Below the pieces are notes generated by a model. It worked only from the letters and a program-made list of their open reading frames with translations, did not search any database and was not told the DNA's origin. A stretch of DNA of 64,000 nt. Source: Macrostomum lignano (Eukaryota). Below, piece after piece: positions 1 through 50,366 of the stretch. The DNA lies in the NCBI GenBank assembly GCA_002269645.1, contig NIVC01000622.1, positions 62,001 to 126,000 of the forward strand, given 5' to 3'. The position numbers and the translations under genes were made by a program. Each line of letters opens with the position of its first letter. Position 1 is the first letter of the stretch.

Positions 1-899
1 ATTTATTTCAATCGAATTACTTACTTAACTACCTAAAATACCTGTAATGTAAGAACCCGCTGGCTCTGTCTGAGAAGCTAATTAAATTAACTGCAGCACC
101 TTTATGAAAGCTATTTTTAAAAAACTACTCCAATCTTGACTTACCTGAGAGACCAATTAAGTCACCTGTTGTAAAGTTATAGTTAATTACACCCGCCTCC
201 AGAAATCTTATCTATCTGAGAAGCCAATTTAAATTATCGGCGGTGCCATAAAAGTTTATTATTACCTGTCTACTTACCTTTAGGGGCAATTAAGTCACCT
301 GCGGTATCCTAAAAGTTAATTACACATCTGCTACCTTTACATGTATCTTATCTATCTGAGAGAGCAATTAATTAAAGTACTTGCAATTAGTCTCGTACAC
401 TTTTGCATTCAGATCAGACTGTTCAAGACTCCCTAATTTACACCTATCAATTCAAGTCATCTAGCTAATGCTGGCTACCTTTACCTAATTAATAATAAAA
501 TATCTAAGCAAAAATTAAATCCCACTACAATTCCTCACAGTTCGTCTGATATATAATTAAAGAGTGGCAGACTTTCGAGGGCTACGAAAGGTGTGAAAAT
601 CATAAAAAATAGTACTAATAAATATTATATTGCATTGATAAACCTTACTAATAGTTCCCTAGCTCAACAATAACTTTATATAGCCTGAATTATAATATAA
701 ACTGCTTTTGCCGTTTTGTTTCGGTTTAACTTCCGTCGCGTTTTGTGTTGTTTTTACCATTTATACTACTGCTGCTGCCGCTAATAAAGACTACTAATAC
801 TATTTTGACAAAACCAAAGTGCAGTTAGTACTTTTTGAAGTGAGCTGTTTGGAAATCTTTGCCTGGCCCTCTCTGCCTTTCCCCCTCCCTCCTATGAAG

Positions 900-3277
900 C
901 CACCGGATGAGGGCCTTGTCGCTAGCGAGAGACTGGCCAAGGCTAAGGCTAGGCAACAGGTACCTAATTAGAGTCCGAATACCTGCAAAATATCATCATT
1001 TATTTATTTTTCTTTCGCGGATGAAATCTTTATAATTGCAGCGGTTTTACCTGCTTTATACATATGTATACATATATTTATATGATTGAGACATCCAAAC
1101 CTTAAAACACCTGGCTTTATGATTGTTTTTATTTATTCCTTCTTTACCTTGTTTATAATTAATCGGTGTTGAGCTTGTGAATTGTATCCGATCTGGTTTC
1201 AATTCTCATTATTGCTGTCGAAAGGTTAAGGCGCTGCTATATAGAAAGTTAGTTATTTATTTAAAATCACCATTGATAAGAAAGCATATCTAATTGATGC
1301 TAATTTTTCTATGGTCGTTGCTAAGGAATTCCCCATTATGGGTTGTTAGATAAGGATTCCCCATTATGGGTTGTTAGATAAGGATTCCCCATTATGGGTT
1401 GTTAGATAAGGATTCCCCATTATGGGTTGTTAGATAAGGATTCCCCATTATGGGTTGTTAGATAAGGATTCCCCATTATGGGTTGTTAGATAAGGATTCC
1501 CCATTATGGGTTGTTAGATAAGGATTCCCCATTATGGGTTGTTAGATAAGTATTCCCCATTATGGGTTGTTGCTAAGGAATTCCCCATTATGGGTTGTTA
1601 GATAAGGATTCCCCATTAGGGGTTGTTGCTAATGAATTCCCCATTATGACTTGTTGCCAAAGGAATTCCCATTGCGGGTTCTTGCTAAGAAATTCCCTAT
1701 TATTGGTTGGAAAAGGAATTCCCAATTTTAGGTTGTTTCTGAGAAATTCTCCATTATGGATTTTTTGAAAAAGGAATTCCTCGCTAGGGTGTTGCAAGAG
1801 GCTTCATCTGTTGCTCAGTGTTAAAAATAGCCAGATAAAAAGCTTAATGAAGTATTGCAGTCGTGAATTTACTGGCCTCGTTAGCTGTTATAATGCTGTG
1901 AAATATTCAACAGTTGATTATTAGATATATTAATTATTCCATTTATATTTCTGCCTGCGGTTCTCTAACTCTGTCTGTCCTAATGGCACCTATCTGCCCT
2001 CTGCTTCTAGTAAATGTATTTATAGTTAATTATTGAATCTATAGAATTTACCTGGCCACCTGGGCAATTTATTAGAGAGTTTAAGTTGTTAAACATTTCA
2101 TTTATTCCAGCATCCGACAAGCAATGCTTCATCCCAGATGGATTTTTGAGTACTTTTCAATGAAATTTTTCAAATTCAATTATATTTGCATTTGCATTAC
2201 CAATTCGAATTACGCACCTAGTTCCAGTTTATTCATCTAATTATCGTATACCTTTCTTTTTAAATTATGTATGCTTCTTGATTTGCTAGCAGCATCTAGC
2301 AGCATAGCTAATAATCAATAATTCTTTTGCTTTAAGAGCACAGATATCAAACAGATAAGCTTTATTCGTGCCAATATCAGCCTATCGTAGTTGCTGAGAC
2401 AGCCTCACTGACTGAAACTTTGTCTCATGTATTGCAGGCATTTCCGGTCTTAATAAATCCGAGGGAAATTCATTTTTTTACATTTGTTTAAGGACCCAGT
2501 GGAGGATCAGGGAGGGCTGGCAGCGGTGGCTCACCTGAAGGATCAGGGAGGGGTGGCTCACCTGAAAAATCAGGGAGGGGTGGCTCACCTGAAGGATCAG
2601 GGAGGGGTGACTCACCTGAAGGATCAGGGAGGGGTGACTCACCTGAAGGATCAGGGAGGGGTGGCTCACCTGAAGGATCAGGGAGGGGTGGCTCACCTGA
2701 AGGATCAGGGAGGGGTTGCTCACCTGAAGGATCAGGGAGGGGTGACTCACCTGAAGGATCAGGGAGGGGTGGCTCACCTGAAGGATCAGAGAGGGGTGGC
2801 TCACCTGAAGGATCAGGGAGGGGTGGCTCACCTGAAGGATCAGGGAGGGGTGGCTCACCTGAAGGATCAGGGAGGGGTGGCTCACCTGAAGGATCAGGGA
2901 GGGGTTGCTCACCTGAAGGATCAGGGAGGGGTGGCTCACCTGAAGGATCAGGGAGGGGTGGCTCACCTGAAGGATCAGGGAGGGGTGGCTCACCTGAAGG
3001 ATCAGGGAGGGGTTGCTCACCTGAAGGATCAGGGAGGGGTGGCTCACCTGAAGGATCAGGGAGGGGTGGCTCACCTGAAGGATCGGGGAGGGGGGCTCAC
3101 CTGAAGGATTCACAAGGATACGTCAGCGCGCACCTTAAGTCTCCCCCCCCGCTCAAGGTACCCTTAAACTCGCTCCCAAACCCGCAGGTGGTGCGCAGCC
3201 TGGACTCGGACCTGATGGACGCCCAGCACCTGCTGCAGTACCAGCAATCCAGGCAGCATCAACAGCAGCCAACCTAA
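900..3277 (+). CDS. Probable last two coding exons of a gene starting upstream of the window (unknown product)
   Basis: Exon 900-959 follows a long pyrimidine tract + AG and ends CAG|GTACCT. Exon 3188-3277 follows CCCGCAG and ends TAA. Both are phase 0 and join as PPDEGLVASERLAKAKARQQ-VVRSLDSDLMDAQHLLQYQQSRQHQQQPT*. No family recognised. Confidence 0.45.
1323..1625. repeat. 28 bp minisatellite AGGATTCCCCATTATGGGTTGTTAGATA, ~10 copies, decaying rightwards to ~1790
   Basis: Direct reading; each unit holds the near-palindrome CCCAT-T-ATGGG. Confidence 0.95.
2503..3105. repeat. 27 bp minisatellite GATCAGGGAGGGGTGGCTCACCTGAAG, ~22 copies
   Basis: Direct reading; explains the repetitive ORFs 2484-3104 (+) and 2478-3113 (-). 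Confidence 0.95.
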
Positions 3278-5604
3278 TAACTTAGCTAATCAAGTGAGTC
3301 ATTTTTAGGTTTCAGTTCTTGGTTTCGAATTGTAGCACTTTGTAAACAGAATGACCATTTCTCTCAATTTTTTAGATCCTGTTCACGCTTCACTCGGCTA
3401 TGCAGCACTGCTTTATTAATATTTTTTTAAAATTAACATTGCCCTATAAAAACTAACACTAAAAATAATGGCTGTGATTTCTGCAATTGTCTATTTTCGC
3501 TCGATTGAGGTCCCCCCCCCCGAAATTTTCTGTCTTTAAAAGTGTGTTTTGAGATGATTTTTTACCTGGTATGCAAGCATTGATTGTGGTAGGCTTGTGG
3601 TGGCACTAGGCATATCTAGAAATGCTTGGTTTAGAATCTATTTTGTGTGAAAGTTTACAAAATTCAAGTATGGTTCAATGGACCCTTATTAATTAATTTT
3701 CCGTTCCCATTGTTTCGTCTTTTAGTTTTTTCCCGCGCTAGCTGGCTAATAAAAAAACAAACGGCTGTTTTTGCTTCTTTCGTGTAATTTTCTTGTTTTA
3801 AGACTATAATGTTTGCAACGCTCTACTGCCGCGGCTGATCAGTAGTCTACTGCGTATAATTCGGTCGTGTAAGTAGTTTCGAATAAATTTTATTTGAGAA
3901 AAATAAACTCTCGTTCTGTTATTTCGCTTTAAATTTTTGTTTGTTATGTTTTTTTTTCAAATTGAAGAGAGCCCTGAGGTTCTCCGCTTCCGTCAGTCAT
4001 CTGTTTTTGCTTTTTGTCATCATGTTTTCTTGTGGCTGCTCCGTCATCCGCTGTAGTGTCATTTTGTCCAGTCGCTTCTAGAACTTTTTTTAGCTTTGTA
4101 TGCCCTTTTAGGACGCGTGTGCGAGCTGGCCGCGTCTTGTGTTGCTTGTTTGTGTTTTTTAACAACTACTAATAGTAATAAAATGTACTTCAAAGCCACT
4201 GTAAGACTCGTGCACTGTGTTTTTCATAAGTTTATTAACGTACTTGTATTGTTTTTTTAATCTGTGTACGGCTGAGTGCCTTTAGGTGGTTCAATTTATG
4301 TAGCTCGCTTAATCATTATATAAAATTTGGTTATTACTAATTAAACGTGATTCAGCATTAAGGACATGCCAGGTGAGTGAATACACCTGTTTCTGTGCAA
4401 CTGTGGCACACTGGCGCGGGTGTACAATAACTGTTCCGCTTTGTTTCTCTCCGCATCAACCGTATAAAAATGTAAAAACTGCGTGTTTAAGTTTGTTCCT
4501 CATTTGCGGAGGGTCGCTAGCCGCTACAATTTTAAATCAGCAAATGCATGTCATTTTGCTCCTCGATGTCTGCTTCAGAGTCAGTCGGCTGATTTATTGT
4601 ATCATCAGTCATAGTCAAAATCGCCCTTCAATGTAATCTGTATTTATAGAATAGCCCTACAATAAGTTTGTTGTTTTGAGCATCTTTTGCGTCAGCTCAA
4701 AAGTTTGCATTGTGTTGTGGCGGAGGACTTCTAAACTAGACAAGCCGAACTGGCACAGGGCTTCTTAGGGCACGATTTATGGTTTACAAAACCTGTTTAC
4801 AAAGCCTGCGGCGCTTCTTAAAGAAACATTATAAATAGACAGCGCAAAGGTCCGCCAAAGAATAGAAAGAATAGGTATAGAAGCTGGATTGTGCTCACTT
4901 GCAAGCGATTCTGACATCAAAGTAGCTATCGTAAACGCTTCTCAAATTGCTCGTCAATTGGCTCGGGTAAGTTAATACGTACTCTATGAGCAAGAGGTAC
5001 ATATTTTTACATGTTTAATTCTCTCGCAATAGTGCCTGGGTTCGATTCCTGCGGCTTAATGTGAATGTCTCGCTTAATGACTCGTCTCGGAAACTCGTAT
5101 ACGGAAGCTGGCCTGGGGTCGTTTCGGGCTATTCTCATTTCTCGCCCATGGGGGCCAAGCCGCAAGGCAAACACAGCGTTACATGTGCATTGCCCGACTA
5201 TATGAGAAGGTTAGTGCCGACGTATGTCCTTTGTAAGCGTGTGCGTGCTCAAGACGACTTAAAGCTACATGTGCGATAGCGTACAAGCCAACGCTGCAAA
5301 ACCCCGCGAAGTCGTAGCTAACTAACCCTTAGCCGTCAGCAGATCCTAAAACTTTCTTGTTCCTTTTGGTAGGACATTGCTATATATTTCCGCCAAACGA
5401 CAATCCGCTGTCCGCCAAACGCGTATCGATTTTTTTGTTTGCTTTTTTGTTTTTTTTCTTGCGGAAAGGTATTAGTTACATGTACATGTACCTTGTAGTT
5501 AGTAAGTTATAGTTAGACAAACCATTCTTAGTATATTCATGTAGTGGATAAGTTAATTGTTTCAAATTTGCTCTCAAACCACTATAGGGCTGGTTGACGA
5601 CGAG

Positions 5605-8600
5605 ATGTCCATCCATTTGGAGGGAGTTGAATTGGACGATATTGAAGCTGAACAGGAAGAAGTCCGCGATGTCGTGACGTGTACTACCGCTAAAACTGTA
5701 TATCAAATAAATGACGCCACCGATGGTAACCAAGTAGAAGATGACAATCGAAAGACCAAAATTAAAGAATTGCATAAAAAGCTTTTCTATTATTCTAAAA
5801 ATCTTGAATTTGAAAAAGCCTTAAAGCATCTCACCGAAAATAAAAAAGAATTTGATGAAGAATACAGCGAAATCAACCAAGTCAAAGACACTGAGAGAAC
5901 TGCCGTGCACTATGCGGCCAATGATGCAGAAGGTGAGCAACTTTTTCAACAGTTGATTGCCCTACAAAACTACAGCGGATTGTCAAACGCAGCAGATAAA
6001 TCTGGTCGCACGCCCATGCATCTTTCGGCCAGGCATCACAGTGAAAAGCAGTTCAAGGCAAACTTCGGGATGCCTCTGTCTGACTCGAAACTTCAGATGA
6101 CTGATGTAAACGGTGCAACCTGTTTGCACTACGCGGCTAGAAATGAAAATTGTTGCGATATTTTCAAGACGGTCATCGAGTCTGTGCCAGACTGTCTAAT
6201 GTGGCGGAGGAAGGACAATGTCACTGTGCTCGACATTTTTATGCGTTATGCCGAGAAAGGCATTGAACAACTGTTTGATGAAGATTGGCGCGGTCTGAAT
6301 GCACTACGAGACGCCATAAAAGATGTGCGGAGGTGCAGAGTAATCGCAAGTACACTTGCATCCACTGGGCGGCAATTAGCAGTGACCCGAGAAAACTATT
6401 TCTTCAAAAAGCGATCGATGCTTTAGAAAGCGACGCAAGTTGGAAGTACTTGACTTCTCTAGGGTCGGATAAGGTGACTCCACTCCATATTGCTGCCACT
6501 GATTGCAATGAAGAAACCGCTAAGTGGCTTCTGTATAAACTAAACAATGAGAGAAGTCTTGAAGATCTGAAGGACTTTGAAGGCAACACTGTGCTACACA
6601 AGGCAGCTTCTAATGAAATGTCGCTGGCCACATTTCTTGACTACCAAGACAAATTAAAACATCCACCGCGAACCCCACATCCATATTTTACATGGCACAA
6701 CAACTTTGGCAAGACCGTGCTTCACATAGCCTTAGAAATGTGCAGTCCTGCAACTCTGAAGACGCTTCTAGAGACCATTGAAAGCTCAGATTTGGAACGT
6801 TTGGTCAAGCTTCAAGACAAAGAAAAAAATACAATGGCACACGATGCCGCAAATAATGAGAGTAGCAAGGTGCTGCAGATCCTGGCAGATCATCTTGGAA
6901 GCTGGAACTTTCTTGCCTGGCGGAACAGCTCAAAGCAGTCCGTTTTGCACTTTGCTGTGAAGCACTATGGAAATATCGACGCGCTACTTGGAGAAGTTAA
7001 GAGATTGAAAACTGAATGGACACTTAATTACGTTGATAACGACGGGAATACTCTGCTTCATTCCTTGTTCCAGACCAACAGAGACGTAGATGATGTGGAA
7101 GCGTTCTGGAAGGCGGCAGAAAGTCTCGTCAAGGCTGGTGTCGATCAATTTGCAGAGCATCATCTCAAAGACACTGGCTCAGTACACTGCACTAAGCGAG
7201 CACTGCCAAGAAATGCTTCGAAGCTTTCTCATTAGCCCAACTGGTTTGCATGCGGTTCATGTATTTGCTGCAAGGCACGACCTGAAGCAGCTTGCTGAAC
7301 CTCTCGCTAAACTGTCGAATCAACAAGTTCAGGATCTACTGCGCCTCCCAGTGACTCAAGCGCACCGCAGCAGTGGTGCAACGGCCTTACACTTTGCCTG
7401 CAAGGCGGGTAATCAAGAGAATATTAGATACCTAATGAGTCAGGGTCTTCAATTGTCTGACGAAACAGACTCCGGTTTGTCTTGTGTTGACTTTGCCGAC
7501 GCTAGCGAGAAACTAGATGAACTCATTGATGCAGTATTTCCTGATGAAGAAGATTGCGATGAAGACGCCGACAGCAACTATGACGACAATGCTAGCGAAA
7601 GATCTAGAGAAATCACACGACAGAGTTCGCTTACCGACGTTAACTTCATTCGTTTATTAGACAAAAGAACTGGAGCTCTCAGGCTCCCAAGTCGAACAAA
7701 AGCTAAAGATTGTCTGGCATCTATTGAGGCGTCAATTGCGTCAGAAGATCTTAGTGCCAAAGAGCAGAACAAGTCGAATGAAAGAAGCGATATGAGTATC
7801 TTGATAAAAGCAATTAAGTCCGACTCCCCAGAGATCTACAGGTGCGCACTGAAACTGTGCCGGGTCACAGCAGAGACCGAGGCAGACTTTCCGGAATTTT
7901 ACAGAGAACGGCTTTTTGACATAAGCAATGAATATGAACTAGGAAATGTTTGTGATAGGTTTTTAACAATTCCATTCAACGAAACTTCAGAATTATCAAT
8001 AATCGATGCAGCTGTCTGCCTTGACAAGATAGACATTCTTATCGATCTTGTGCTCACTCGGCAGTTTGACCTGATTCCTGCATGCATAAATCTGCTCATT
8101 CAGCTGCAGCCGAGAATCGCTAAATCGGAGGGCAAGTCCGAACAGCTTCAGCTGCTGTACAGCAAAGTTATCAGTGTAGCCATGAACGCTCTTGACGCAC
8201 TGTATTCAAACGCTGACGAGGAAGAAAGACAACTTTTGTTCCAGTACATAACTGGCTCGCAATGGGACGATGATTGGGAGACGACTGGTCCCAAGTTTCC
8301 GTGCCGAATGGAAAATGGCTCGACTAAACCCTACACCCTAATGGAAATGATTGAGGAAGCGGGCGATGGCGATCTGTTTGCCAGCGACTGCCTACATAAT
8401 CTGATTGAATCCGAGTGGAGCAACGCCTATTCCCGCTATCGCAGAAATTGCTGCAAACGCAAATTCTCGGTTAAGCCAAGGATAAAATTTTGGATTCACC
8501 TGATCTCCTTTCTAGCATACAACGTTTTTATCGCGTGGTACATAATGGATTTGCCTACGACTTTCAAGTTCTGGCCTGCAGATTTAGTCATGATAGCTTA

Positions 8601-9931
8601 TCTTCTTTCATTTACTTTGCAAGAAGTTCTGGACATCTGCACTCGAAGCAAAAGAAGACGTGCCAAAATATGTGGCATTGAAATAAAAAAATGCCCCGTG
8701 TACTTCAAGGATGTCCTCAACCTACTCGACTGTTCCGCCTTAATATTGATGTGGGCCGGGCTGCTGCTGAAGCTTGCCATGTGGGGCTGCATCTTCAACT
8801 ATGTCACAGGGGTGGACAGCTCCTCGATGTGCAGCGAGACCAACTCAACGGCCTATCAGGCACTCTTCCGCGGTGCGTCAGCTAATCGAACGTGGACCCA
8901 GCCGACTCCGTACAGCGCTTACGCCTGCCAGATGGTTCTGAGCACCGCGTTCCTGCTCTGGGGGTTTCGATCTGTCGCCTTCCTCAGCTACTCGGAGCGA
9001 ATCGGTCCGGTGGTGTCCATGCTCAGGACTTTGATCATCCAGGACTTGATTCCTTTCTCTGTCATTATTGTGATCATATTTTATTCGTTCGGAGTTTTCT
9101 TCTTCAACCTGCTGTATCCGGTTGTCACCTCGACAGAAGCTGACAGAAGCGCGTCTGACTACAGCTGGCATGCCTTTCTGCAGGTGTTCATGCTGCCGCT
9201 AAACCTGCTCTTCACCAACTTTGACGTTCTTCCCACTGAGACGGCTAAAGATAAGGATCAGGTACTGAGAGAAGTGGCCCACCACCTTGGTTACAAGTGG
9301 TTCAGCAGAGTTATGATGTTCGTCTTCCTGCTGCTCTCGAATATCGTGATGATCAACTTGCTGATCGCCCGGTTCAGCTTGACTGTCAGCAAGATGGACA
9401 GCAAGTCTTTAGGAACCTGGAGAAAAAGAAATATAGAAATATTGCGTGAATATCAGAGCTACAGTCCGCTTCCTGCTCCGATTTCTTTTCTGCACTACCC
9501 TATAAAAATGGTGTCGTGGTGCATTAAAAAGAGAAATGATGATAATAACGAGCAAAACAGGCTTTTCCCCGAAATTAAGGTAAGTCTTTGTATTCCATTG
9601 AATTGCAACATTGAGCGGTAAATGTATGAGTGATCAAGAAGTACTTGTACTTTTGATTATTATTTTCTAGGATGCGTGGAACAACGAATCCGATTATCCG
9701 GATAATTACATCGAATTTTTGTTGTTCCAAGCCAGACAGTTCAGACGAATTCGACCGCAGCTGGCCCGGGTGGTGACCAGGAACAAGAGCGACTCGGAAG
9801 CTCTGGTAGCTCACGTGGAGAACCTGGTTTCCACTGCGAACCGCGACCTACACGATCGGCTGGGCCAGCTAGAGGAGGAAATCAATCGAAAGTTCGCGTT
9901 GCTGCAGGAAGCGATCAGTAAGAAAAAGTAG
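5605..9931 (+). CDS. Ankyrin-repeat TRPM-like cation channel (~1,410 aa after frame repair)
   Basis: Three overlapping ORFs (5557-6426, 6285-7235, 7090-9621) give continuous ankyrin motifs (TAVHYAA, TPMHLSA, TCLHYAA, TCIHWAA, TPLHIAA, TVLHKAA, TVLHIAL, SVLHFAV, TLLHSLF, TALHFAC). These are followed by an MHR4-like segment (AMNALDALYSNADEEERQLL...DLFASDCLHNLIESEW), six TM helices, NLLIARF and a TRP-domain-like WRKRNIEILREYQSYSPLPAPISFL. Intron 9580-9670 (AAG|GTAAGT...TTCTAG) leads to coiled-coil exon 9671-9931. Frame breaks near 6320 and 7120-7190. Acceptor at 5586-5587 suggests further 5' exons. Confidence 0.85.
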
Positions 9932-11529
9932 TAGCAAGATTCCTTGTTGTATCAGAAGCAGCTGATGTCTGCGAGTGTGAAAGAAGACGTACTGAAGTGC
10001 TTTGTAGAGTAGATTTTTTCTGCTTCGTGATGTTGAAGACAGTTTCTTTGTTTTTTTTTCACAGCGTCTTAAAAAATGCGCGATTTTACAAAAGTAGCTA
10101 GCTAAACTAACATTTTGTTTGTGTTGCATAACTTTTTAATTTACATTAAAGTTTACCACTTGATATACCATTTCTTAAACTATCTGGTTCCTTGATGTGG
10201 ATTAAGAGTTTTTTTAAAAAGAGTTACTTGTCTATACTTCTCCGATGAGAATTTAGGCATGTAGATCATACAATACAGCATCTTTAACGAGGATTTAAAT
10301 CAATAATACATAAAATAAAATGATTTAAAATGACTCGTAATCCACTCAAAGCATGCCTATATAATGAGGTCAATATATTCGGTATCCAGGATGCGTTACC
10401 CAGTTGCACAGGTTGCACTTATGTTTATATTGTTACTCAATGCGAATTTTATATTTAAATTTTTGCTTGATTTTTAACAAGCTAATATTTATGAATCAAA
10501 GTTCCGACAATTTTCTAAACTTTTCTATCAGTCTATCGAGACATTCTGGACGTCAAATAACGTAAATTTTTTTTGGTAAATTTTCCTCTAAAATTACGTG
10601 TATTTGATGCTCATTTAAACTGACACTCTATAGGCTGTGCCTTCTGTGGACTAACTAACAGATATTTCAAATAGGACTAACTAACAGATATTTCAAATAG
10701 GACTAACTAACAGATGTTTAAACACTTTTAAATTGGAATGTCCATGGCTAACTAAAAAATGAATTCAACAATCGTGAACGCTTCATTATTCAATATTATG
10801 TTTTTTCATTGGACATTTAATTTTATTACTACCTGGTGTGTTCATTCCTTAAACCTTTTAACATCGTTTAAGTACAGGCGTATTTTTAAAAACTGAAATA
10901 GACCTTAATTGAAAGTTTTTTCGAGCACTTCAGTTAAATAAATATGTAGTGTGTGATACTATAAACCTTTTTGTGAACTTAGTGTCTTCGCGTAGAGTTT
11001 TGATGGATTAATTTACATGTAAAAATGAATTACCCGGCTAATAGACACAACACCTGGCGTGAAAAAACATTCGATCCTCAGGCGTAGGAACTTGTGGCGT
11101 ACAGCTACTGAAAACTTTAATGTGTGTAATGAATTTAAAACAAATCTCAATGTGTTTTCATTTCAATTAGCTTTATTATCTTATTCAGCGCGGGGGCACG
11201 GATATTGGATGCTCAGCAACATCGAAAAGTCGCCATCACAGAAGATTCCGTCTGTGGTCGCCACTTTTGAGAGTGCAGGTAAAGTCTCTCAATCTTTGCG
11301 AGTGACGCAACTTAGCTACGCCACGCGGCAGACTTGAGTTCAGGAATGAAATGGTGGGAGCGGCGTGCGAGGCTTGGACGGATTAAAGCTAGCCCGATCA
11401 GTTTTCTCGTATCTTTTATTTCAGAATAGTCCAAGAGAAATTGCTCACTGGCGTATAGAGTGGCGAGTTTGCAATGTTTCTGAGTATATTAGCGCTCGCA
11501 GTAGATTTTGCGACCGTATTTTTTGCCCC

Positions 11530-13395
11530 ACTGCTTGCTCGTCTTTGCGCACAGTTGTATACCATTGGACTGAGAACCTGAGTTCTGTTCTGAAAGTTCT
11601 GTCTGAGAGCAGTGCAATAAATTTTTTGACTATTTTGTTTTGCGCCCATCCACGTGAGCGCTCGTGTTGTACTCGTAACGTTGGTCAATAAGTAAGCTCT
11701 AAAAATTTACAAGGTAGAGCAGATTGCCTAGTCAGGCAAGACACCGCGCACTTGTGACGATAAAGTTGAAAAAGTGAAGCCAACGACCGGCCCGAGAGAA
11801 AGATGGCATGCCCCCCCCCCCAAAAGGGCCATCAATTTTATGGTATTCGAAGCAATCGTATAATTCAAGTGCGACAGGGTGAGGGGCGAGGTGACTTCCC
11901 AGGGCAGACTGGGAGGGTTGGGGCGAGCGACAGAGAGAGACACAATAGCACAGCACTAGTACAGCGAGCCATTTATGAAAGTGACATTATTCAAAGATTG
12001 CAGTAGGTATACACTTGCTGTATTCATGACTAGGGTAATGTTACTGTACCTGTCTCGATCGAACCGAAGCCCATTCTCTTTACTGAGTTCAAATAGACAA
12101 AATGCAGATAGCTCAAACAAAGCTGAAGTTCAGGGTATATTTTTCTCACAAAGCATACACAACAACACAACACAACAACAGTCAGTAGTGTCTCCCTCCA
12201 CGCAAGTTGACATGATTCGCGCACTCAAGACTGCTTAAAAAGTCTGTGGAAACTTCAAAATTGCTAATAAATTGAATATAATGTTGCAATTTACTTTGCA
12301 ATTTACAGCAAGTTGGGTAACTCGTGGCTTGAATTATGATGGGAAGTTTATGATTTGGATTTGAAATACTGTCTGACACGCTTTTGGATTTGCCAGCGGG
12401 CGACTATAAGGCCGCAGTATATACGCGGATTTTCAGTACATGTAGGGCTGGCGCCCCTGGTGCTGGCGCCCCTATGGTGCTAAAGCCCCTGGTGCTAAAG
12501 CCCCTGGTGCTAAAGCCCCTGGTGCTAAAGCCCCTGGTGCTAAAGCCCCTGGTGCTAAAGCCCGTGATGCTAAAGCCCCTGGTGCTAAAGCCCCTGGTGC
12601 TAAAGCCCGTGATGCTAAAGCCCCTGGTGCTAAAGCCCCTGGTGCTAAAGCCCCGCCCCAAAAGACATTGCTTAACTTTTGTGCCGCATTAGGGGGAAGT
12701 TAGCTGTTGCTGAGTGAATGCATATTCGCTATGAATGCCTGGAAAAGAATACTTTTAGGCTTGGATTTGCTGCTTGAACTTTTGACCGAGCAGTGGCCTC
12801 ACTGGGGACCATAAAAGCACCGTTTTTAAATTTTATCATTGCGTGCACTAAGATGGCGCGACTCAATTTATTGTCACTGTTTACTCGTGTTTGCGCAGTT
12901 GTACTATATGGGACTGAGCCTGAGAACTTACGAAAGTTCTGTCTGAGACCCGCGCAATGTGTTGTTTACTCGTTCTTTGCGTCCACCCACAGGAGCGCTC
13001 GCTTTGCAACTTGAGTCAGTAAGTAAAATACTGTAAAAGTTGCACAGTAGAGCAGCTTACCAAGTCAGACAATTACACCGCGCACTTGCTACGGTACACT
13101 GTAGAGTTCAGAATTCGTATCAAACGACCGGCCGAGGAAAGGAAGGCATGCTCACTAGGCATCAATTTTACTATACTCACAGGTTTAGCTACGCGCAGCA
13201 TTTAATGCAAATGTACGGCGGGGTTAGTTGCGAGATGGCGTGATTGATGTACGTGCGTTAGAGAGAACTGGTTAGTTTGGGACAGACTGTGATTTATGAC
13301 AGTCCAAAACCGTGGCTCATTCTTCTCTTTACAGAGTTCAAATGAACAAAACGGTAGCAAAAAAGCTGAAGTTCTCTTTTTCTCACAGTATAATA
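11530..13395. repeat. Two diverged copies of a ~550-630 bp non-coding unit (~11530-12160 and ~12880-13395)
   Basis: Collinear shared blocks such as GAAAGTTCTGTCTGAGA, GAGCGCTCG, ACACCGCGCACTTG, AACGACCGGCC and TTCTCTTTAC.GAGTTCAAAT...AAAGCTGAAGTTC. Confidence 0.75.
12447..12656. repeat. 15 bp minisatellite GTGCTAAAGCCCCTG
   Basis: Direct reading; explains the PLVLK and STRGF repeat ORFs. Confidence 0.95.
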
Positions 13396-14744: not shown

Positions 14745-17700
14745 ATGGCCAACTCTGGCATTAAGGCTGGCGCCACTGAGACACAGGAAGACAAGCTGCA
14801 GGGCTTGCGTGAGGATGTAGAAACTCTGCTCCACGTCATCGTGGAAGATCTTCCCGAGAAGTATCGTCAGGATCGACAAGAAAATAAGATCACCCATGAG
14901 ACAGAAAAAAATCTGGTTGAATTAATCAATGCTCAAGATTCACGCATCAAGGCTAAGCTTTCCTCGCAACCAAAACATAACAAGCTTTGGAAGAAAAAAT
15001 TCGACGAATTCTCCGAGCTCTCCATAATCAACGTGGCTATCGCTATCGACAAAGTGAACATTCTGCTTGAGCTGGTTCTCTCCAGACGGCACGACCTGCT
15101 GCCCGCTTGCATCACTTTGCTTATAAAATTGAGACCGAAAATTGCCTCAAAGAAAGGGAATGAAAAGAAACTGAAAGAGCTATGCGCTGATGTTTCGAAC
15201 TTGGCTATGAAATGTCTTGACGAGCTCTACTCCAGAGCAGAAGAAGATAACCAGAAGCAGCTGCTCTTTGGCTACATTAAAGGATCGTTTCCAGACAGTG
15301 CTCACGACACCAAAGGCCCAAAGTTCCCATGCCAACTAGGCGCAAACGCACTGAAATATTTTACTTTGTTGGAGATGATAGACATGTGTGGAGAGGGAGA
15401 TCTGTACGCCACCGAGTGCTTGCACAGGTTGATCAATGAAGAATGGGACCCGCCTAAAAAGAAAAGTCCCAAGGAATCTAACGAAACTGAAGGCAGCAAC
15501 GTTCAATCACGTGAAGAAAGTTGCTTCCTAAATCGACGCGTAAAGCCGAAAATTAAATTTTACATCCATCTTTTCTCTTTCATCACCTTCAACATCTTCT
15601 TCGCCTGGTACATTATGGACTTTCCGAGAACGTTTCGATACTGGCCAGTAGAAATCATTCTGGCAGCCTATTTCCTGTCCTTTACTTTGCAAGAAGTTCT
15701 GGAAATCTGCAAAAGAAGCAGAATCGATAGTCTTTACTTGTGCAACTTTAAAGTAAAGTGCCCCGTGTACTTCAAGGATGTGCTCAACCTACTCGACTGT
15801 TTCGCCTTGATATTGATGTGGGCCGGGCTGCTGCTGAAGCTTGCCATCTGGGGCTGCGTCACAGGCGGAAACCGATCCTCGCTATGCAGCGAGACCAACT
15901 CAACGGCCTACCAGGCACTCTTCCGCGGTGCGTCAGCTGATCGAACATGGACCCAGCCGACTCCGTACAGCGCTTACGCCTGCCAGATGGTGCTGAGCAC
16001 CGCGTTCTTGCTCTGGGGGTTTCGATCTGTCGCCTTCCTCAGCTACTCGGAGCGAATCGGTCCGGTGGTGTCCATGCTCAGGACTTTGATCATCCAGGAC
16101 TTGATTCCTTTCTCTGTCATTATTGTGATCATATTTTATTCGTTCGGAGTTTTCTTCTTCAACCTGCTGTATCCGGTTGTCACCTCGACCGAAGCTGACA
16201 GAAGCGCGTCTGACTACAGCTGGCATGCCTTTCTGCAGGTGTTCATGCTGCCGCTAAACTTGCTCTTCACCAACTTTGACGTTCTTCCCACTGAGACGGC
16301 TAAAGATAAGGATCAGGTACTCGGAGAAGTGGCGCACCACCTTGGTTACAAGTGGTTCAGCAGAGTTATGATGTTCGTCTTCCTGCTGCTCTCGAATATC
16401 GTGATGATCAACTTGCTGATCGCCCGGTTCAGCCTGACTGTCAGCCGGATGGACAGCAAGTCGGTGGAAATCTGGAGAAAAAGAAACGTTGAACTGCTTC
16501 GCGAATACCAGAGCTGCAGTCCCGTGCCCGCGCCGCTCTCCTTTATTCACTACATCTACAAGATCTTCCAGTGGTGCCAGAAGCGGCGGAATAATGCCGT
16601 ACACCCTGAAAATACCCAAGAAGGCCTAATCGAGGTAAATTTATTCTTTTTTCGCCACTAAAACATTTTTTGCATAATTTTTCTTGCAATTTATGAAATA
16701 TTGAGTCGTAAATACTGGTAGATATATATTGCAATACTGATAAATACATAAAACTTTGTTGTTTGACGTTAGATCCTTCTGCCGCAGACACCGCAGACAC
16801 TTGCGTCATATATTATACTGTGTGCACATGGGTAGCGGCAAAGCGTCCGAGTCTCTTTGGCGCAAAATATCAAGGGTTGAATTCCTCGACAAAAGCTATG
16901 AATACTGACCAGGCGCTTGGGCTGCTTTTCATTATTATCGGAAAAATAGCAGGTGGGTTTTTACTCGAAGCGCAACGCCTTTGGTGGTGCCGTCCCGCGA
17001 CCACCGGTGCAGAGGCAGTTCTGCCCACTCTGCTGAATCCTGCAGAGCACATACAAGCGCACCAATATTGTACGCAAGCACGCACTCAAATACACACTCA
17101 CACAGGGTGTACAGCGACCCGGAATTTCTAATTGCCAGACGTGCACACTCTCTGCCCCCCCTCACTAGGAAAGTGTGCTTAGATACGTTTTAATGGTTAG
17201 GTATCATGCAAGCATTCTGGCATCTACTTTGTGGCCAACTGTCGTCGGCGCGAGGTTTTGATTTTTGTTGTTGTTGTTGTTGTTGTTGGTGTTGTTGTTG
17301 CTGTTGTTGTTGTTGCTGTTGTTGTTGTTGTTGTTGTTGTTGTTTTTGTTGCTGCCGCTGCTGTTGTTGTTGTTGTTGTTGTTGTTGTTGCTGCTGCTGT
17401 TGCTGTTGTTGTTGTTGTTGTTGTTGATGCCGGCCCCGCTGGGTCACCTGGTCAATGGGCCTACGGGAACGGTCTGACTGCAACATGGCACAGCCAGCCG
17501 TCAATGCCCCGCTCACCATAGGACAGGGGCCTTGCACCACCGCGTCGCCGCGTGAGTGTGCAGAGGGCATGTCGGTGAGCCTGCCACCAGGTCCACCAGG
17601 GTCAACCCCAGCAGAGGGGCCGGAATTCCAGCTTTCGTGTCCGTGGCCAACGGACCTTCCACCCCACGCCTGACAGTCCAGCACTGGCGGCCAGCCCCGA

Positions 17701-17823
17701 TGGGGTCTAGCCAGTGTCTGGAGCTGCTCGGAGGCCTGCTGGATGTGAGGCTGCTGTTGCTGTTGTTGTTGTTGTTGTTTTTGTTGTTGTTGTTGTTGTT
17801 GTTGTTTTTGTTGCTGCCGCTGC

Positions 17824-17876
<53 letters not shown>

Positions 17877-18312
17877 TTTTTGTTGTTGTTTTTGTTGTTG
17901 TTGTTGTTGTTGCTGCTGTTCTTGTTGTAAGATCTTTCATGACCGATTCAAATGTACGCTCGTACTTCTATAATGAATTCAAACAGAAATTTCAAGTAAG
18001 TTTATGTTCATACTTACAACTGTCGCCCAGGAAACATGGTCAAAGAAACCGAAGGACTTGGAAAGTTACGAAAAATACTTGGAATTCCAAACCAAGCACT
18101 TGCAGCACATTCTGTCGCAACAGCAAAGCCGTAAATTCATGCACGAAGGGATCGACGAGGATGTCAAGAGATACTTAAATCATCTGGTAAAATCCGCCAC
18201 TCGCGACATGCTCAGCGACATGCTCAAAGTGCTGCAGAGCTCAGTCGGTACTGATGATCCTGCTGGGCATATAAAGATTTCAGGTGCAAATCAGACGACA
18301 TCATCTACTTGA
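14745..18312 (+). CDS. Second TRPM-like channel paralog with no ankyrin repeats seen (~720 aa)
   Basis: Exon 14745-16634 (in-frame TAA just upstream; ends GAG|GTAAAT) encodes the MHR4-like region, S1-S6 and TRP domain. Phase-0 exon 18031-18312 (CCCAG|GAA ACA TGG; ETWSKKPKDLESYEKYLEFQ...) aligns with the last exon of the first paralog (DAWNNESDYPDNYIEFLLFQ...). Confidence 0.85.
17040..17165 (+). repeat. Dispersed repeat; related copies at ~44025-44140, and more weakly ~40740-40810 and ~32290-32340 (reverse)
   Basis: Shared GC.CCAATA.TGTACGCA.GCACGCACTCA...CTCACAC.GGGTGTACAGCG...TTTCTAAT...GT.CACACTCTCT between 17060-17150 and 44035-44130. Confidence 0.7.
17263..17928. repeat. Two interrupted (TTG)n arrays (17263-17426, 17751-17928) flanking a GC-rich unique segment, in the last intron of TRP paralog 2
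   Basis: Direct reading; both arrays carry the interruption TTTTTGTTGCTGCCGCTGCTGTTG. Confidence 0.95.
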
Positions 18313-20176
18313 AAGAATAGCTCTGATAGTAGGACATTGAGTCGGTTTAAAATATCTTTTTATATCATTCCTTTTTTGCGGACACCAGTTATAACCATGC
18401 TCTTATTCTGACATTTTCTTCAATATATTTATCTCCTGCGTTTAAAAAAGTCCTAATAATTGAATAAAGTGGCATGCCAACGTAGACTTAAAACAGTTGG
18501 AGCTCAGGTAACTTCATGTTAGACATGTTAGACTAGGTTTGGAACGTCATTGCTTAGACTGAGAGCGGCAACAGACAAAACGAAAAATTCTGAGCCGTCC
18601 TAACATTCTCTCGATTTGTGTGGAATTGTGGCAGATATTGTGTGATCCAGAGAGATTGTGTGTGACCCTGATCCTATCCTGAGAGTAATCCCCTAAGAGT
18701 CCAAGGTAAGTGACCTGGATGATGAGATGTTTCATACTACGAGTAAATTCATGAGCCTCTTCACGGCATCGATTCTCGAACCAGAATCGGTTCGGATTTC
18801 CAAGAAAAAAAGCAGTATAACTATTTAACTTTGTTGAATGTTTGACTGCCTTAACAGCCTCACTTTGCACGATTTCTCACTTTCTTCTTGGCTTTTGCCA
18901 TTCATTAATCACAATTTTAAAGCACTGATATCCCTCTAGTTTAGGAGGCAAAAAGTTATACTTTACAAATTGCTTCTGGTTCTAGAACCAGAACAAGCAA
19001 TATGAAGAGCCTCCATATCAACTGCTCCGACAAGTTATCGGGACGAAAATATTTTTTCTAAAATTTTTTACTTAATTTGACAATTTTTTTATTAAAGGAA
19101 ATTTTATCACTTTGAACTGTAACGCGAATCAACGTGCGAGTTTATATATTTTTTATTTTCTATGTAACTGTTCAAGCCGTTACATGTGCATATTAAGCAC
19201 AAAATATTGCGTTATATTTAGTTTTGTCACATTGACCTGCTAGCTTCTAAGAAAAACTGTCTTCTAACAAATCTCGGAATCACATGTACTGAATAATTAG
19301 CTACTACGTTGAACTTTTTAAATTCATCAAAGTGTCTTATCAATCTATCGTGTTGTTGCGGTGTAGATACATTTTGTTTACTAGATATATAGTAGCTAGT
19401 GTACTAAGTAGTTTTATTGTGAATTTTTCGATAACTTTATTAGATTTTTTAGAATTTTTTATTTTTAGAAGTTTCAGAATTTTTAGATTTTGGATTTTAA
19501 GTTTTTTTCTGCCTTAAAAGAAATCTTTATTTCTTTTGAATTGAATAAACAATGTCACAAGTTATATTGTTATAGCGTACTCATTAGTTGTTAATTACTC
19601 ATAATATTATAGTAGTTTGAGTATCCTATTTTTAATCAATTACAAAATTATCATATTTTTATCACGATTTGTTTAATTTTTTTTTCATTTTTTGTTATCG
19701 CTACTTTGTTTAAACTAATACAGTCCAATAATTGTAGGCAACATTGATGTCTTATATAAAGCGCACACCTGAAAATAATTATAGACGCAACTTTTTCCAC
19801 CTTGCTGAACTCGTCTTTTAACTCCTGCGAACTTTTTCGTGCACATCTCTAAAGAGCGAAGTCTACTTTTTTGTTAATATCCAAGAAGCGTGGAGCAGAG
19901 TAGAGGCGTGAAAGCCTAATAAGAAGTTCAGTGCGTGAAGCGGGAGAAATAGACGTGAATTCTTGGCGATGAAGATTTGTGAAGACTCGGGGTAGTAAAT
20001 ATCAGGCCGTGAAGGCTAACAGGTAAGATTAGGACATAAGGAAAATCTGTAGACAAAGCCCATGTACTTTAGGAAAAATTAAAAATATTACAAAAGAAGC
20101 CGTGAACGTTTAGTAGTATATGGCCCACCACAGGACACCACTGCAGAATTTAATTCAGTAATCACGCTAGCGGATG

Positions 20177-21128
20177 GGGAACCGGAAGCTGAATAGGGAT
20201 AGGTGAACCTGAAGCTGAATAGGGATAGGTGAACCGGAAGCTGAATAGGGATAGGTGAACCGGAAGCTGAATAGGGATAGGTGAACCTGAAGCTGAATAG
20301 GGATAGGTGAACCGGAAGCTGGATAGGGATAGGTGAACCGGAAGCTGAATAGGGATAGGTGAACCGGAAGCTGAATAGGGATAGGTGAACCGGAAGCTGA
20401 ATAGGGATAGGTGAACCGGAAGCTGAATAGGGATAGGTGAACCGGAAGCTGAATAGGGATAGGTGAACCGGAAGCTGAATAGGGATAGGTGAACCGGAAG
20501 CTGAATAGGGATAGGTGAACCGGAAGCTGAATAGGGATAGGTGAACCGGAAGCTGGATAGGGATAGGTGAACCGGAAGCTGAATAGGGATAGGTGAACCG
20601 GAAGCTGAATAGGGATAGGTGAACCGGAAGCTGAATAGGGATAGGTGAACCGGAAGCTGAATAGGGATAGGTGAACCGGAAGCTGAATAGGGATAGGTGA
20701 ACCGGAAGCTGAATAGGGATAGGTGAACCGGAAGCTGAATAGGGATAGGTGAACCGGAAGCTGAATAGGGATAGGTGAACCGGAAGCTGAATAGGGATAG
20801 GTGAACCGGAAGCTGAATAGGGATAGGTGAACCGGAAGCTGAATAGGGATAGGTGAACCGGAAGCTGAATAGGGATAGGTGAACCGGAAGCTGGATAGGG
20901 ATAGGTGAACCGGAAGCTGGATAGGGATAGGTGAACCGGAAGCTGAATAGGGATAGGTGAACCGGAAGCTGGATAGGGATAGGTGAACCGGAAGCTGAAT
21001 AGGGATAGGTGAACCGGAAGCTGAATAGGGATAGGTGAACCGGAAGCTGAATAGGGATAGGTGAACCGGAAGCTGGATAGGGATGGGTGAACCGGAAGCT
21101 GGATAGAGATAGGTGAACCGGAAGCTGG
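20177..21128. repeat. 26 bp minisatellite GTGAACCGGAAGCTGAATAGGGATAG, ~36 copies
   Basis: Direct reading; the 26-aa periodicity of the minus-strand ORFs equals three units. Confidence 0.95.
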
Positions 21129-29119: not shown

Positions 29120-31180
<2,061 letters not shown>

Positions 31181-31645: not shown

Positions 31646-43463
<11,818 letters not shown>

Positions 43464-50343: not shown

Positions 50344-50366
50344 ACTGTATTAAATGCAATATCTGG

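What the first reader, a model, noticed from the sequence alone, without database searches (positions are those of the whole stretch)
5605..9931. Chimeric TRP channel: ankyrin array on a TRPM-type core
Seen: ~13-15 ankyrin motifs, then an MHR4-like helix set, TRPM-like S4-S5 linker (FRSVAFLSYSERIGPVVSML), S6 (LLSNIVMINLLIARF), TRP domain with W...EY...PLPAP and a C-terminal coiled coil. Known: TRPM channels normally start with SLOG/MHR1-2 domains and have no ankyrins, whereas long ankyrin arrays typify TRPA and TRPN. Inference: a domain-swapped TRP subfamily with possibly new gating. I cannot exclude that similar flatworm channels are already described.
Basis: partly seen in the sequence, partly recalled or inferred. 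Interest (0 to 1): 0.85.

Follow-up and report, generated by a model that had tools for sequence, protein, structure and literature searches.

The report
Broken flatworm ankyrin–TRPM-like channel gene
This is a flatworm (Macrostomum lignano) gene for an ion channel with a TRPM-type core and about 15 ankyrin repeats in place of the usual TRPM head, a design already described for the schistosome drug target TRPM_MCLZ, and this copy is broken by two frame-disrupting lesions.

Summary
Window 5605-9931 (+) encodes about 15 ankyrin repeats, a helical linker, six TM helices, a TRPM-style TRP domain and a short C-terminal amphipathic helix.

- The reading frame is broken at about 6322-6345. The same sequence is present in a second genomic copy.
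- The frame is broken again at 7156/7157, where 47 nt present in that second copy are missing.
- There is one 91-nt intron (9580-9670).

The organism is Macrostomum lignano. The TM core is closest to TRPM among solved structures: TRPM1 scores E 2e-17 and NOMPC 7e-6, and no TRPC, TRPA or TRPV chain is among the 60 best. No SLOG domain is present.

The gene belongs to a tight clade (99% bootstrap) of at least 17 M. lignano paralogue lineages with the same architecture. That clade groups weakly (61%) with the other ankyrin-bearing, SLOG-less flatworm channels.

This architecture is already published for schistosome TRPM_MCLZ, the meclonazepam target, and its "TRPM-like" clade.

Verdict: a divergent new member of a known kind, and this copy is most likely a young pseudogene. 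An intact, ankyrin-less paralogue lies 5 kb downstream. Interest is modest.

The parts
5605..6327 (+). Start codon, N-terminal region and ankyrin repeats 1-4, in frame 1
   Evidence: The N-terminus is homologous to that of paralogues P0005, P0006, P0013 and P0017.
6322..6345 (+). Lesion j1: a frameshift (frame 1 to frame 3) inside ankyrin repeat 5. The exact base cannot be pinned down.
   Evidence: The sequence is identical in the homeologous locus L001. Paralogues read straight through this point. The only GT..AG that would restore the frame is 14 nt long, too short for an intron.
6330..7156 (+). Ankyrin repeats 5-11, in frame 3
7156..7157 (+). Lesion j2: 47 nt missing relative to L001 (GAAAAATCTC...GACAGTC). 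This shifts frame 3 to frame 1 and destroys ankyrin repeat 12.
   Evidence: The L001 reading ...EKNLGQNCLA... matches paralogues, which read ...ENNVGQNCLH....
7157..7500 (+). Remains of repeat 12 and ankyrin repeats 13-15, in the same open frame as the channel
   Evidence: (Ank at aa 591-614).
7501..8481 (+). Helical linker region. The conserved block 7990-8418 (ILIDLVLTRQFDLIPAC ... LFASDCLHNLIESEW) is MHR4-like.
   Evidence: hhalign: family A linker vs ankyrin+PF25508 channels, 93%, E 2.8e-7. Those channels vs TRPM MHR4, 99.6%, E 2e-23. The direct A-to-TRPM comparison is not significant. Pfam PF25508 is not detected directly.
8482..9375 (+). S1-S6 channel core: S1 8482-8547, S2 8578-8637, S3 8713-8775, S4 8920-8985, S4-S5 linker 8986-9042, S5 9043-9114, pore helix and filter (LLFTNFD) 9163-9225, S6 9298-9375
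9409..9489 (+). TRP helix and the following PLPAP motif (WRKRNIEILREYQSYSPLPAPISF)
9580..9670 (+). Intron, 91 nt, GTAAGT...TTCTAG, phase 0
   Evidence: The joined reading DAWNNESDYPDNYIEFLLFQARQFRRIRP matches the conserved paralogue motif. Paralogue 2 has an intron at the same position.
9671..9931 (+). Last exon: conserved helix YPDNYIEFLLFQARQFRRIRP (9695-9757), heptad-like amphipathic helix (9794-9928) and stop codon
   Evidence: The HMMER alignment to TRPM1 and TRPM2 runs into their coiled-coil region.
14745..18312 (+). Tandem paralogue 2: an ankyrin-less short channel with an open frame. Exon 1 is 14745-16633, the intron is 16634-18027 and exon 2 is 18028-18312.
   Evidence: It is close to P0002.

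Best explanation
The interval is a two-exon Macrostomum lignano gene for a subunit of about 1,410-1,430 residues of a TRPM-like cation channel. About 15 ankyrin repeats take the place of the SLOG/MHR1-2 head of canonical TRPM.

Shown:
- Behind the ankyrin array come a helical linker, an S1-S4 domain, a pore with an unusual filter (LLFTNFD; the family consensus is FGxF[E/D]), a TRPM-type S6, a TRP helix plus PLPAP motif, a conserved post-TRP helix and a short heptad-like C-terminal helix.
- The S1-S4 domain keeps four positions invariant across the family: the S2 glutamate, the S3 asparagine and aspartate, and a TRP-helix glutamate.
- The gene belongs to a well-supported clade expanded in M. 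lignano.
- The frame is broken twice. One frameshift is shared with a homeologous copy, and there is a 47-nt deletion.

Inferred:
- The four invariant positions are the TRPM Ca2+-site positions.
- The clade shares its ankyrin-for-SLOG architecture by descent with the TRPM_MCLZ-type "TRPM-like" channels of parasitic flatworms.
- Intact relatives work as tetrameric cation channels, gated through the S1-S4 pocket and Ca2+ site and the TRP helix. The ankyrin array would act as a cytoplasmic sensor or tether.
- This copy is a recently inactivated pseudogene and makes no full-length channel.
For: Organism and family:
- The best protein hits are M. lignano.
- An exhaustive HMMER search of 1.84 billion representatives gives 33 hits at E<1e-30. 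Those checked are M. lignano proteins of 1,380-1,970 aa carrying Ank plus Ion_trans.

TRPM affinity:
- PDB phmmer: TRPM1 scores 2.3e-17 and nearly all of the best 60 chains are TRPM. NOMPC scores 6.6e-6 and the Chlamydomonas TRP-like channel 2.9e-7. No TRPC, TRPA or TRPV chain is among the 60.
- More distant library hits with recognisable domains are SLOG/PF25508 TRPMs or ankyrin-bearing flatworm channels.
- The S2 E, S3 N..D and TRP EY..LPxP motifs are conserved.
- Foldseek of a low-confidence model returns only TRPM chains in its top 50.

No SLOG.

Linker: transitive profile match to TRPM MHR4.

Tree: family A 99%, neodermatan ankyrin clade 100%, all ankyrin-bearing versus SLOG TRPMs 61%.

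Literature: TRPM_MCLZ lacks SLOG, has N-terminal ankyrin repeats, is Ca2+-permeable, is encoded by three exons, and lies in a "TRPM-like" clade next to TRPM (PMC10788528, PMC11731825, PMC12861061).

Lesions:
- Described.
- The automatic model P0004, from a third haplotype, skips both sites.
- L001 carries further lesions: -1 nt at 6585, -60 nt at 8482, +1 nt at 8684, and loss of homology after 9211.
- Window versus L001 shows 25 non-synonymous and 16 synonymous changes, a ratio of about 0.5.
Against: - The union of all ankyrin-bearing clades has only 61% NJ bootstrap support.
- Core identity of this protein to the MCLZ-like clade (22.6%) is no higher than to SLOG TRPMs (21.7%).
- No TRPC, TRPN, TRPA or TRPS sequences could be put in the tree. 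Placement relative to them rests on HMMER and Foldseek ranking only.
- Pfam's TRPM MHR domain (PF25508) and TRPM_tetra are not detected in this family.
- The structure models are poor, with pLDDT 42 and 52.
- That the neodermatan clade contains Smp_333650 is inferred from the published statement that it is the only SLOG-less, ankyrin-bearing schistosome TRPM. It was not confirmed by accession.
- Pseudogene status rests on genome sequence alone. No transcript data were available, and apart from the two lesions the frame stays open for 4.2 kb.
Confidence: 0.7

Rival explanations
1. The gene is intact and functional. The two frame breaks would then be assembly errors, strain polymorphisms or unrecognised processing.
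For: - The rest of the 4.2-kb coding sequence is open.
- Against its tandem paralogue, the TM part shows purifying selection (dN/dS about 0.26).
- The homeolog L001 shows the frame can be open at j2.
Against: - j1 is base-for-base identical in L001, and it is also skipped by the independent model P0004.
- j2 is a clean 47-nt deletion, which is not a homopolymer-type error, and it is shared with the P0004 haplotype.
- The only frame-restoring GT..AG candidates are 14 and 16 nt long, and the 16-nt one gives a worse ankyrin repeat (reasoning).
- No database protein matches the 843-aa open frame.
Confidence: 0.15
2. The family is an independent TRP lineage that acquired its ankyrin array separately from the TRPM_MCLZ-type clade. 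In effect it would be a new, unnamed TRP subfamily rather than a relative of TRPM_MCLZ.
For: - It is equally distant (about 22% core identity) from the MCLZ-like, ankyrin+PF25508 and SLOG TRPM groups.
- Support for one ankyrin-bearing clade is only 61%.
- Pfam MHR is undetectable.
- The pore filter is divergent.
- The ankyrin arrays are much longer.
Against: - The linker profile matches the ankyrin+PF25508 channels (E 2.8e-7) but not SLOG TRPMs.
- It shares the derived motif RQFD(L/I/Q)IP(A)C with them and with the cestode MCLZ-like protein.
- The NJ topology does unite all ankyrin-bearing channels.
Confidence: 0.2
3. The damaged locus still makes a shortened channel. The 47-nt deletion puts ATG 7090 in frame with the last three ankyrin repeats and the whole channel, giving 917 aa after splicing. 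That would resemble the ankyrin-less neighbour.
For: - The open frame 7090-9621 plus the last exon is intact.
- Short ankyrin-less paralogues with open frames exist next door and elsewhere: P0001, P0002 and window 14745-18312.
Against: - There is no evidence of a promoter, trans-splice site or transcript.
- The first roughly 22 residues would be out-of-frame translation of former ankyrin coding sequence.
- Sister copies are accumulating further lesions in the channel part.
Confidence: 0.1
4. The ankyrin array and the channel are two separate genes that merely lie next to each other.
For: The frame breaks at j1 and j2 separate most of the array from the channel in this copy. Several database models of relatives are split in this way, for example the Schistocephalus fragments P0198-P0200.
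Against: - Three ankyrin repeats and the channel share one uninterrupted frame.
- L001 is open across j2.
- Full-length single proteins exist for many paralogues.
- P0014 (1,537 aa) lies on a contig of only 5.1 kb, so ankyrin array and channel must be read through with little or no interruption.
Confidence: 0.03

Closest known systems
Flatworm TRPM_MCLZ / "TRPM-like" clade (Schistosoma mansoni Smp_333650, the meclonazepam-activated channel; PMC10788528, PMC11731825, PMC12861061)
   Same: - It has N-terminal ankyrin repeats instead of SLOG/MHR1-2.
- Its 6TM core clusters next to TRPM.
- It has a TRP helix and few exons (three there, two here).
- It is confined to flatworms so far.
- The linker shares the RQFDxIPAC-type motif with the cestode member.
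   Different: - The window's gene sits in a separate clade (99%) from the neodermatan clade (100%), with only about 23% core identity.
- It has about 15 clear ankyrin repeats, and paralogues have more.
- The pore filter is FTNFD or FGxF[E/D].
- The family is greatly expanded in M. lignano.
- This copy is broken.
- Drug sensitivity is unknown.
Canonical TRPM channels (TRPM1-8; SLOG + MHR3/4 + 6TM + TRP + coiled coil)
   Same: - They are the best sequence and Foldseek matches.
- The S2 E, S3 N..D and TRP EY..LPxP motifs, the S6 NxxxxNLLIA motif and a C-terminal helical region are shared.
- The linker is related to MHR4 through intermediates.
   Different: - No SLOG, PF25508 or TRPM_tetra hit.
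- An ankyrin array sits at the N-terminus.
- The filter lacks the TRPM GE motif.
M. lignano ankyrin + PF25508 (TRPM2-like domain) + Ion_trans channels (P0059, P0072, P0084, P0087)
   Same: They come from the same organism, have ankyrin repeats, lack SLOG and have a TRPM-like core. Their linker is homologous by profile.
   Different: They keep a Pfam-detectable TRPM MHR3/4 domain and a TRPM-like filter (VGEY). They form their own clade at 100%.
TRPN / NOMPC (29 ankyrin repeats + 6TM)
   Same: It has a long N-terminal ankyrin array followed by a linker helical domain and a TRP channel core.
   Different: The core similarity is far weaker: PDB E 6.6e-6 against 2.3e-17 for TRPM1. The TRP-domain and S2/S3 motifs are of the TRPM type.

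Membership tests
TRPM (melastatin) sensu stricto | N-terminal SLOG / MHR1-2 domain (Pfam LSDAT_euk) | tested here: not met
   No LSDAT hit in the window protein or in 7 family members, even at E<=10. True TRPMs in the same hit list do have it.
TRPM (melastatin) sensu stricto | MHR3/4 region (Pfam PF25508, TRPM2-like domain) before pre-S1 | tested here: inconclusive
   There is no direct Pfam hit. The profile match is transitive only: family A to ankyrin+PF25508 channels at E 2.8e-7, and those to TRPM at E 2e-23. The direct comparison is not significant.
TRPM (melastatin) sensu stricto | S1-TRP core closest to TRPM among TRP families | tested here: met
   PDB phmmer ranking, representative-library hits and Foldseek top 50 all TRPM (low-confidence model). 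There was no explicit tree with TRPC, TRPN or TRPA.
TRPM (melastatin) sensu stricto | The S2 E and Q, S3 N and D, and TRP-helix E positions, which from my own knowledge of TRPM2/4/5/8 structures form the Ca2+ site, plus the TRP motif ..EY..(R)P.LPPP | tested here: met
   The window protein has QEVLD (S2), LNLLD (S3) and ILREYQSYSPLPAP. E, N, D and E are invariant in the family, and the Q position is D/E/N.
TRPM (melastatin) sensu stricto | C-terminal tetramerising coiled coil (Pfam TRPM_tetra) | tested here: inconclusive
   There is no Pfam hit. A heptad-like helix lies at 9794-9928. The HMMER alignment to TRPM1 and TRPM2 extends into their coiled-coil region.
Flatworm ankyrin-bearing "TRPM-like" group (TRPM_MCLZ type) | N-terminal ankyrin repeats, no SLOG, TRPM-like 6TM core | tested here: met
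.
Flatworm ankyrin-bearing "TRPM-like" group (TRPM_MCLZ type) | Forms one clade with the other ankyrin-bearing flatworm channels, beside TRPM | tested here: inconclusive
   The bipartition is present in the NJ tree but has only 61% bootstrap support. The linker profile and motif support it.
Flatworm ankyrin-bearing "TRPM-like" group (TRPM_MCLZ type) | Orthology to Smp_333650 / activation by meclonazepam | tested here: not met
   Orthology is not met. The window's family (99%) is separate from the neodermatan clade (100%) that holds the cestode, trematode and monogenean members. Drug activation is not testable here.
TRPN (NOMPC) | TM core groups with NOMPC | tested here: not met
   NOMPC scores E 6.6e-6 (27.8 bits) against TRPM1 at 2.3e-17 (65.7 bits).
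TRPA / TRPC / TRPV | TM core or family-specific domains (for example TRP_2 and the EWKFAR box for TRPC) | tested here: not met
   None is among the 60 best PDB chains at E<=1e-5. There is no TRP_2 hit. The TRP box reads WRKRN.
Functional protein-coding gene | Uninterrupted reading frame from start to stop after splicing | tested here: not met
   Two frame-disrupting lesions are present.

The most novel reading that the evidence does not exclude
The window's family could be an unnamed TRP subfamily of free-living macrostomid flatworms. It would combine a NOMPC-like ankyrin array of 15 or more repeats with a TRPM-type core that retains the putative Ca2+-site residues and has an altered selectivity filter. 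It would have expanded to at least 17 paralogue lineages as sensory receptors (mechanical, thermal or chemical). It might fill roles that TRPN and TRPV have in other animals; the published schistosome TRP list names only TRPA, TRPC, TRPM, TRPML and TRPP (PMC12861061).
Probability: 0.15. Interest if true: 0.6.

Novelty: new member of a known kind. Interest (0 to 1): 0.3.

Why it matters
Himmel et al. 2020 inferred that ankyrin repeats were lost before the TRPM-TRPS split (PMC7306681). The flatworm ankyrin-bearing TRPM-like channels are the exception. One of them, TRPM_MCLZ, is an anthelmintic target.

A free-living, genetically tractable flatworm that carries dozens of such genes could serve as an experimental system. 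It could be used to ask how an ankyrin array gates a TRPM-type core, and how this architecture arose.

The locus itself adds little. It is a decaying copy and should not be chosen for expression work. Automatic gene models of it (A0A1I8G2X0, Mlig004347g1) are artefactual, because they skip or mistranslate the lesions.

Tried and rejected
- **Micro-introns at the frame breaks.** GT..AG candidates of 14 nt (6325-6338) and 16 nt (7140-7155) would restore the frame. I rejected them as too short. L001 reads through 47 extra coding nt at j2, and paralogues are continuous at both sites.
- **Word-indexed homologue searches.** The three searches returned only 3, 4 and 15 proteins, too few for a deep alignment or for named TRPC, TRPN or TRPA references.
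- **AlphaFold models.** With the permitted shallow alignments they were poor, at pLDDT 42.3 and 51.6. I treat the Foldseek result as weak support, and no claim about the linker fold rests on it.
- **Direct Pfam detection of TRPM MHR, TRPM_tetra or SLOG in the family.** Nothing was found. The direct hhalign of the family linker against TRPM was not significant.
- **Published flatworm TRP FASTA.** Supplementary Dataset 1 of PMC12861061 is not held, so no tree with all TRP subfamilies could be built.
- **Ankyrin counting.** A single-consensus ankyrin phmmer was too insensitive to count repeats. I counted them by motif and Pfam instead.
- **Literature on an M. lignano expansion.** Searches found no description of this family's expansion. 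The library covers only open-access papers.
Full report
**What is in the sequence.**
The + strand between 5605 and 9931 carries four overlapping open frames that together read as one protein:
- frame 1 from ATG 5605 to about 6327
- frame 3 to 7156
- frame 1 to 9579
- frame 2 from 9671 to the stop at 9929-9931, after a canonical 91-nt intron (GTAAGT...TTCTAG, 9580-9670)

The conceptual product is 1,411 residues. Pfam finds ankyrin families across the first 660 residues (Ank_2 at E 2.9e-31) and Ion_trans in the rest (E 6.5e-8).

Fifteen TxxH-type ankyrin motifs can be placed.

**The two frame breaks are lesions.**
The best protein hits are Macrostomum lignano. The locus of one of them, L001 (NIVC01000027), is a collinear copy about 98.5% identical to the window.
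- At the first break (about 6322-6345) the two copies are identical base for base.
- At the second break L001 has 47 extra nucleotides that keep its frame open. They encode ...EKNLGQNCLA..., which matches the ...ENNVGQNCLH... of paralogues.
- Paralogue alignment shows continuous ankyrin repeats across both sites.
- Frame-restoring GT..AG stretches exist but are only 14 and 16 nt long.

The UniProt model A0A1I8G2X0 (P0004) comes from a third haplotype. It has the window's 47-nt deletion but carries L001's substitutions. It skips both sites with invented introns and fuses the gene to its neighbour.

L001 itself has more damage: -1 nt at 6585, -60 nt in S1, +1 nt at 8684, and loss of homology after 9211.

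Window versus L001 differ by 41 substitutions in the coding part, 25 non-synonymous and 16 synonymous. That gives a ratio near 0.5, which suggests relaxed constraint but is not decisive.

I conclude that every copy I could see is disrupted, and that this is most likely a young pseudogene. It was functional until recently. Against the tandem paralogue, the S1-TRP part shows dS 0.35 and dN 0.09.

**What kind of channel it is.**
Against all PDB chains, the channel half matches TRPM1 best (E 2.3e-17), followed by TRPM2, 7, 3, 4, 8 and 5. NOMPC scores 6.6e-6 and the Chlamydomonas TRP-like channel 2.9e-7. No TRPC, TRPA or TRPV chain is among the 60 best.

An exhaustive HMMER search of 1.84 billion representative proteins gave 934 hits, 33 of them at E<1e-30.
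- The strong hits I checked are M. lignano proteins of 1,380-1,970 residues with the same layout. That layout is a long ankyrin array, a conserved linker (ILPDLILTRQFELIPAC...GPKFP...LFATDC), 6TM, IWRK..EMLREY...LPPP, then YP.EY..FL.FQA.QFR..RP and a coiled-coil-like tail.
- One strong hit, P0014, sits on a 5.1-kb contig binned as a Kangiellaceae MAG.
- Weaker hits fall into two groups. The first is other ankyrin-bearing flatworm channels: several M. lignano proteins with Ank + PF25508 "TRPM2-like domain" + Ion_trans, Opisthorchis "ankyrin repeat protein", and Schistocephalus "TRPM7". The second is genuine TRPMs with SLOG and PF25508 domains from flatworms, tunicates, a hemichordate and a choanoflagellate.

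No SLOG, PF25508 or TRPM_tetra is detectable in the window's family, even at E<=10.

Motif comparison shows:
- The S2 glutamate, the S3 N..D pair and the TRP-helix glutamate are invariant. From my own knowledge of TRPM2/4/5/8 structures, these are the positions of the TRPM Ca2+ site.
- The S6 motif is TRPM-like (N..M.NLLIA).
- The post-TRP LPxP motif is TRPM-like.
- The filter is divergent. The family consensus is FGxF[E/D], this gene and its nearest relatives have FTNFD, and TRPM has [FY]GE[LF].

**The linker.**
Profile-profile comparison links the window family's block 7990-8418 to the ankyrin+PF25508 channels (93%, E 2.8e-7, 126 columns). It links those channels to the MHR4 part of true TRPMs (99.6%, E 2e-23). 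The direct comparison is not significant.

The derived motif RQFDxIP(A)C is shared by the window family, the M. lignano ankyrin+PF25508 group and the cestode protein P0201. "MHR4-like" is therefore supported only transitively.

Two AlphaFold runs with the few sequences I was allowed to use gave pLDDT 42 and 52. Foldseek of the better model returned only TRPM chains in its top 50, but with TM-scores of about 0.25. I count this as weak support.

**Phylogeny.**
I built NJ trees of the pre-S1-to-TRP core. They used 57 sequences, 302 columns and 300 bootstraps. The first tree was rooted on a choanoflagellate TRPM. Bootstrap support:

| Grouping | Bootstrap |
|---|---|
| Window family | 99% |
| Window family plus two short or divergent M. 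lignano relatives | 99% |
| Neodermatan ankyrin clade | 100% |
| M. lignano ankyrin+PF25508 clade | 100% |
| All ankyrin-bearing channels versus all SLOG TRPMs | 61% |

Core identity of the window protein is about 22% to each outside group. The family is clearly TRPM-related, but its exact position is not settled. I could not obtain TRPC, TRPN, TRPA or TRPS sequences to include.

**What is already known.**
Sm.TRPM_MCLZ (Smp_333650), the target of meclonazepam, is described as a TRPM channel that lacks MHR1/2-SLOG and has N-terminal ankyrin-like repeats. It is encoded by three exons and is Ca2+-permeable (PMC10788528, PMC11731825).

A 2026 paper places it in a clade next to TRPM and proposes the label "TRPM-like" because of the ankyrin repeats (PMC12861061). 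The review states that it is the only schistosome TRPM paralogue without SLOG. I therefore infer that the neodermatan ankyrin clade in my tree is the TRPM_MCLZ clade. That clade includes Schistocephalus, Hymenolepis, Heterobilharzia, Paragonimus, Opisthorchis and monogeneans.

Himmel et al. 2020 found no ankyrin repeats in TRPM or TRPS. The 2026 TRPM evolution paper does not mention flatworms. I found no description of the M. lignano expansion.

**Mechanism.**
Shown:
- the domain order
- the conserved residues at the S2, S3 and TRP-helix positions
- the TRP helix
- the broken frame

Inferred from established TRPM structures and from the TRPM_MCLZ experiments:
- Intact family members assemble as tetramers through the TM core and C-terminal helix.
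- They conduct cations.
- They are gated through the S1-S4 pocket and Ca2+ site, coupled by the TRP helix.
- The ankyrin array serves as a cytoplasmic input or tether.

The stimulus is unknown. For this locus the expected outcome is no full-length protein. A truncated product from ATG 7090 is conceivable but has no support.

**Verdict.**
The claim of a new subfamily design does not, and the locus is defective. It is a divergent new member of the published flatworm ankyrin-TRPM-like kind.

Noticed in passing
window 14745-16633 + 18028-18312 (+): A tandem paralogue lies 5 kb downstream. It is an ankyrin-less short TRPM-like channel with an open frame, starting MANSGIKAG... directly before the linker domain, and it has an intron at the same position as the main gene. 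Its divergence from gene 1 is mosaic. The linker has saturated dS and no DNA similarity, while S1-TRP is 87% identical at DNA level (dS 0.35, dN/dS 0.26). This suggests gene conversion or a chimeric duplication.
   Followed up: partly
window 46604-51944 (-): A non-LTR (LINE-type) retrotransposon sits in a GC-rich block (55-59% GC). It has a 525-aa ORF with no Pfam hit, an AP-endonuclease ORF, and a 1,007-aa ORF with reverse transcriptase and RNase H.
   Followed up: partly
window 1322-1709, 2525-3109, 12453-12654, 20172-21127, 29120-31192, 35001-36084, 37071-38301, 39349-39971, 45902-46310: The window is unusually rich in mini- and microsatellite arrays (units of 4-28 bp, up to about 260 copies). 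Several create long spurious ORFs on both strands. They account for the extreme GC and AT skews in the composition profile.
   Followed up: no
L001 3760-6027 versus window 2519-3109: The 27-bp minisatellite upstream of the gene is about four times longer in the homeologous locus, so the array length differs between the copies.
   Followed up: no
P0014 / MEE4247282.1 (5,106-bp contig): A 1,537-aa member of this animal channel family (ankyrin array + TRPM-like core, 35% identical) is deposited as a protein of a Kangiellaceae bacterium MAG. This is almost certainly a mis-binned eukaryotic contig. It also suggests the gene is close to intronless in that organism.
   Followed up: partly
P0102 (Clonorchis sinensis KAG5447154.1, 1,708 aa): This model carries ankyrin repeats (aa 63-136) in front of a SLOG + PF25508 + Ion_trans TRPM. 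It is either a fused gene model or a real TRPM with both ankyrin repeats and SLOG. If real, it bears on how the ankyrin-for-SLOG architecture arose.
   Followed up: no
P0037 (Opisthorchis viverrini, 1,906 aa): The model contains two complete channel cores (aa 684-994 and 1363-1679). It is probably two tandem MCLZ-like genes fused by annotation.
   Followed up: no
window 17190-17930, inside the intron of paralogue 2: Long CAG/CTG-type triplet arrays give poly-Q, poly-L and poly-V ORFs on both strands.
   Followed up: no
L002 (NIVC01000217) 2395-4268 and 9919-11792: Another M. lignano locus carries two tandem copies, 7.5 kb apart, of the short ankyrin-less paralogue (P0001 type).
   Followed up: no
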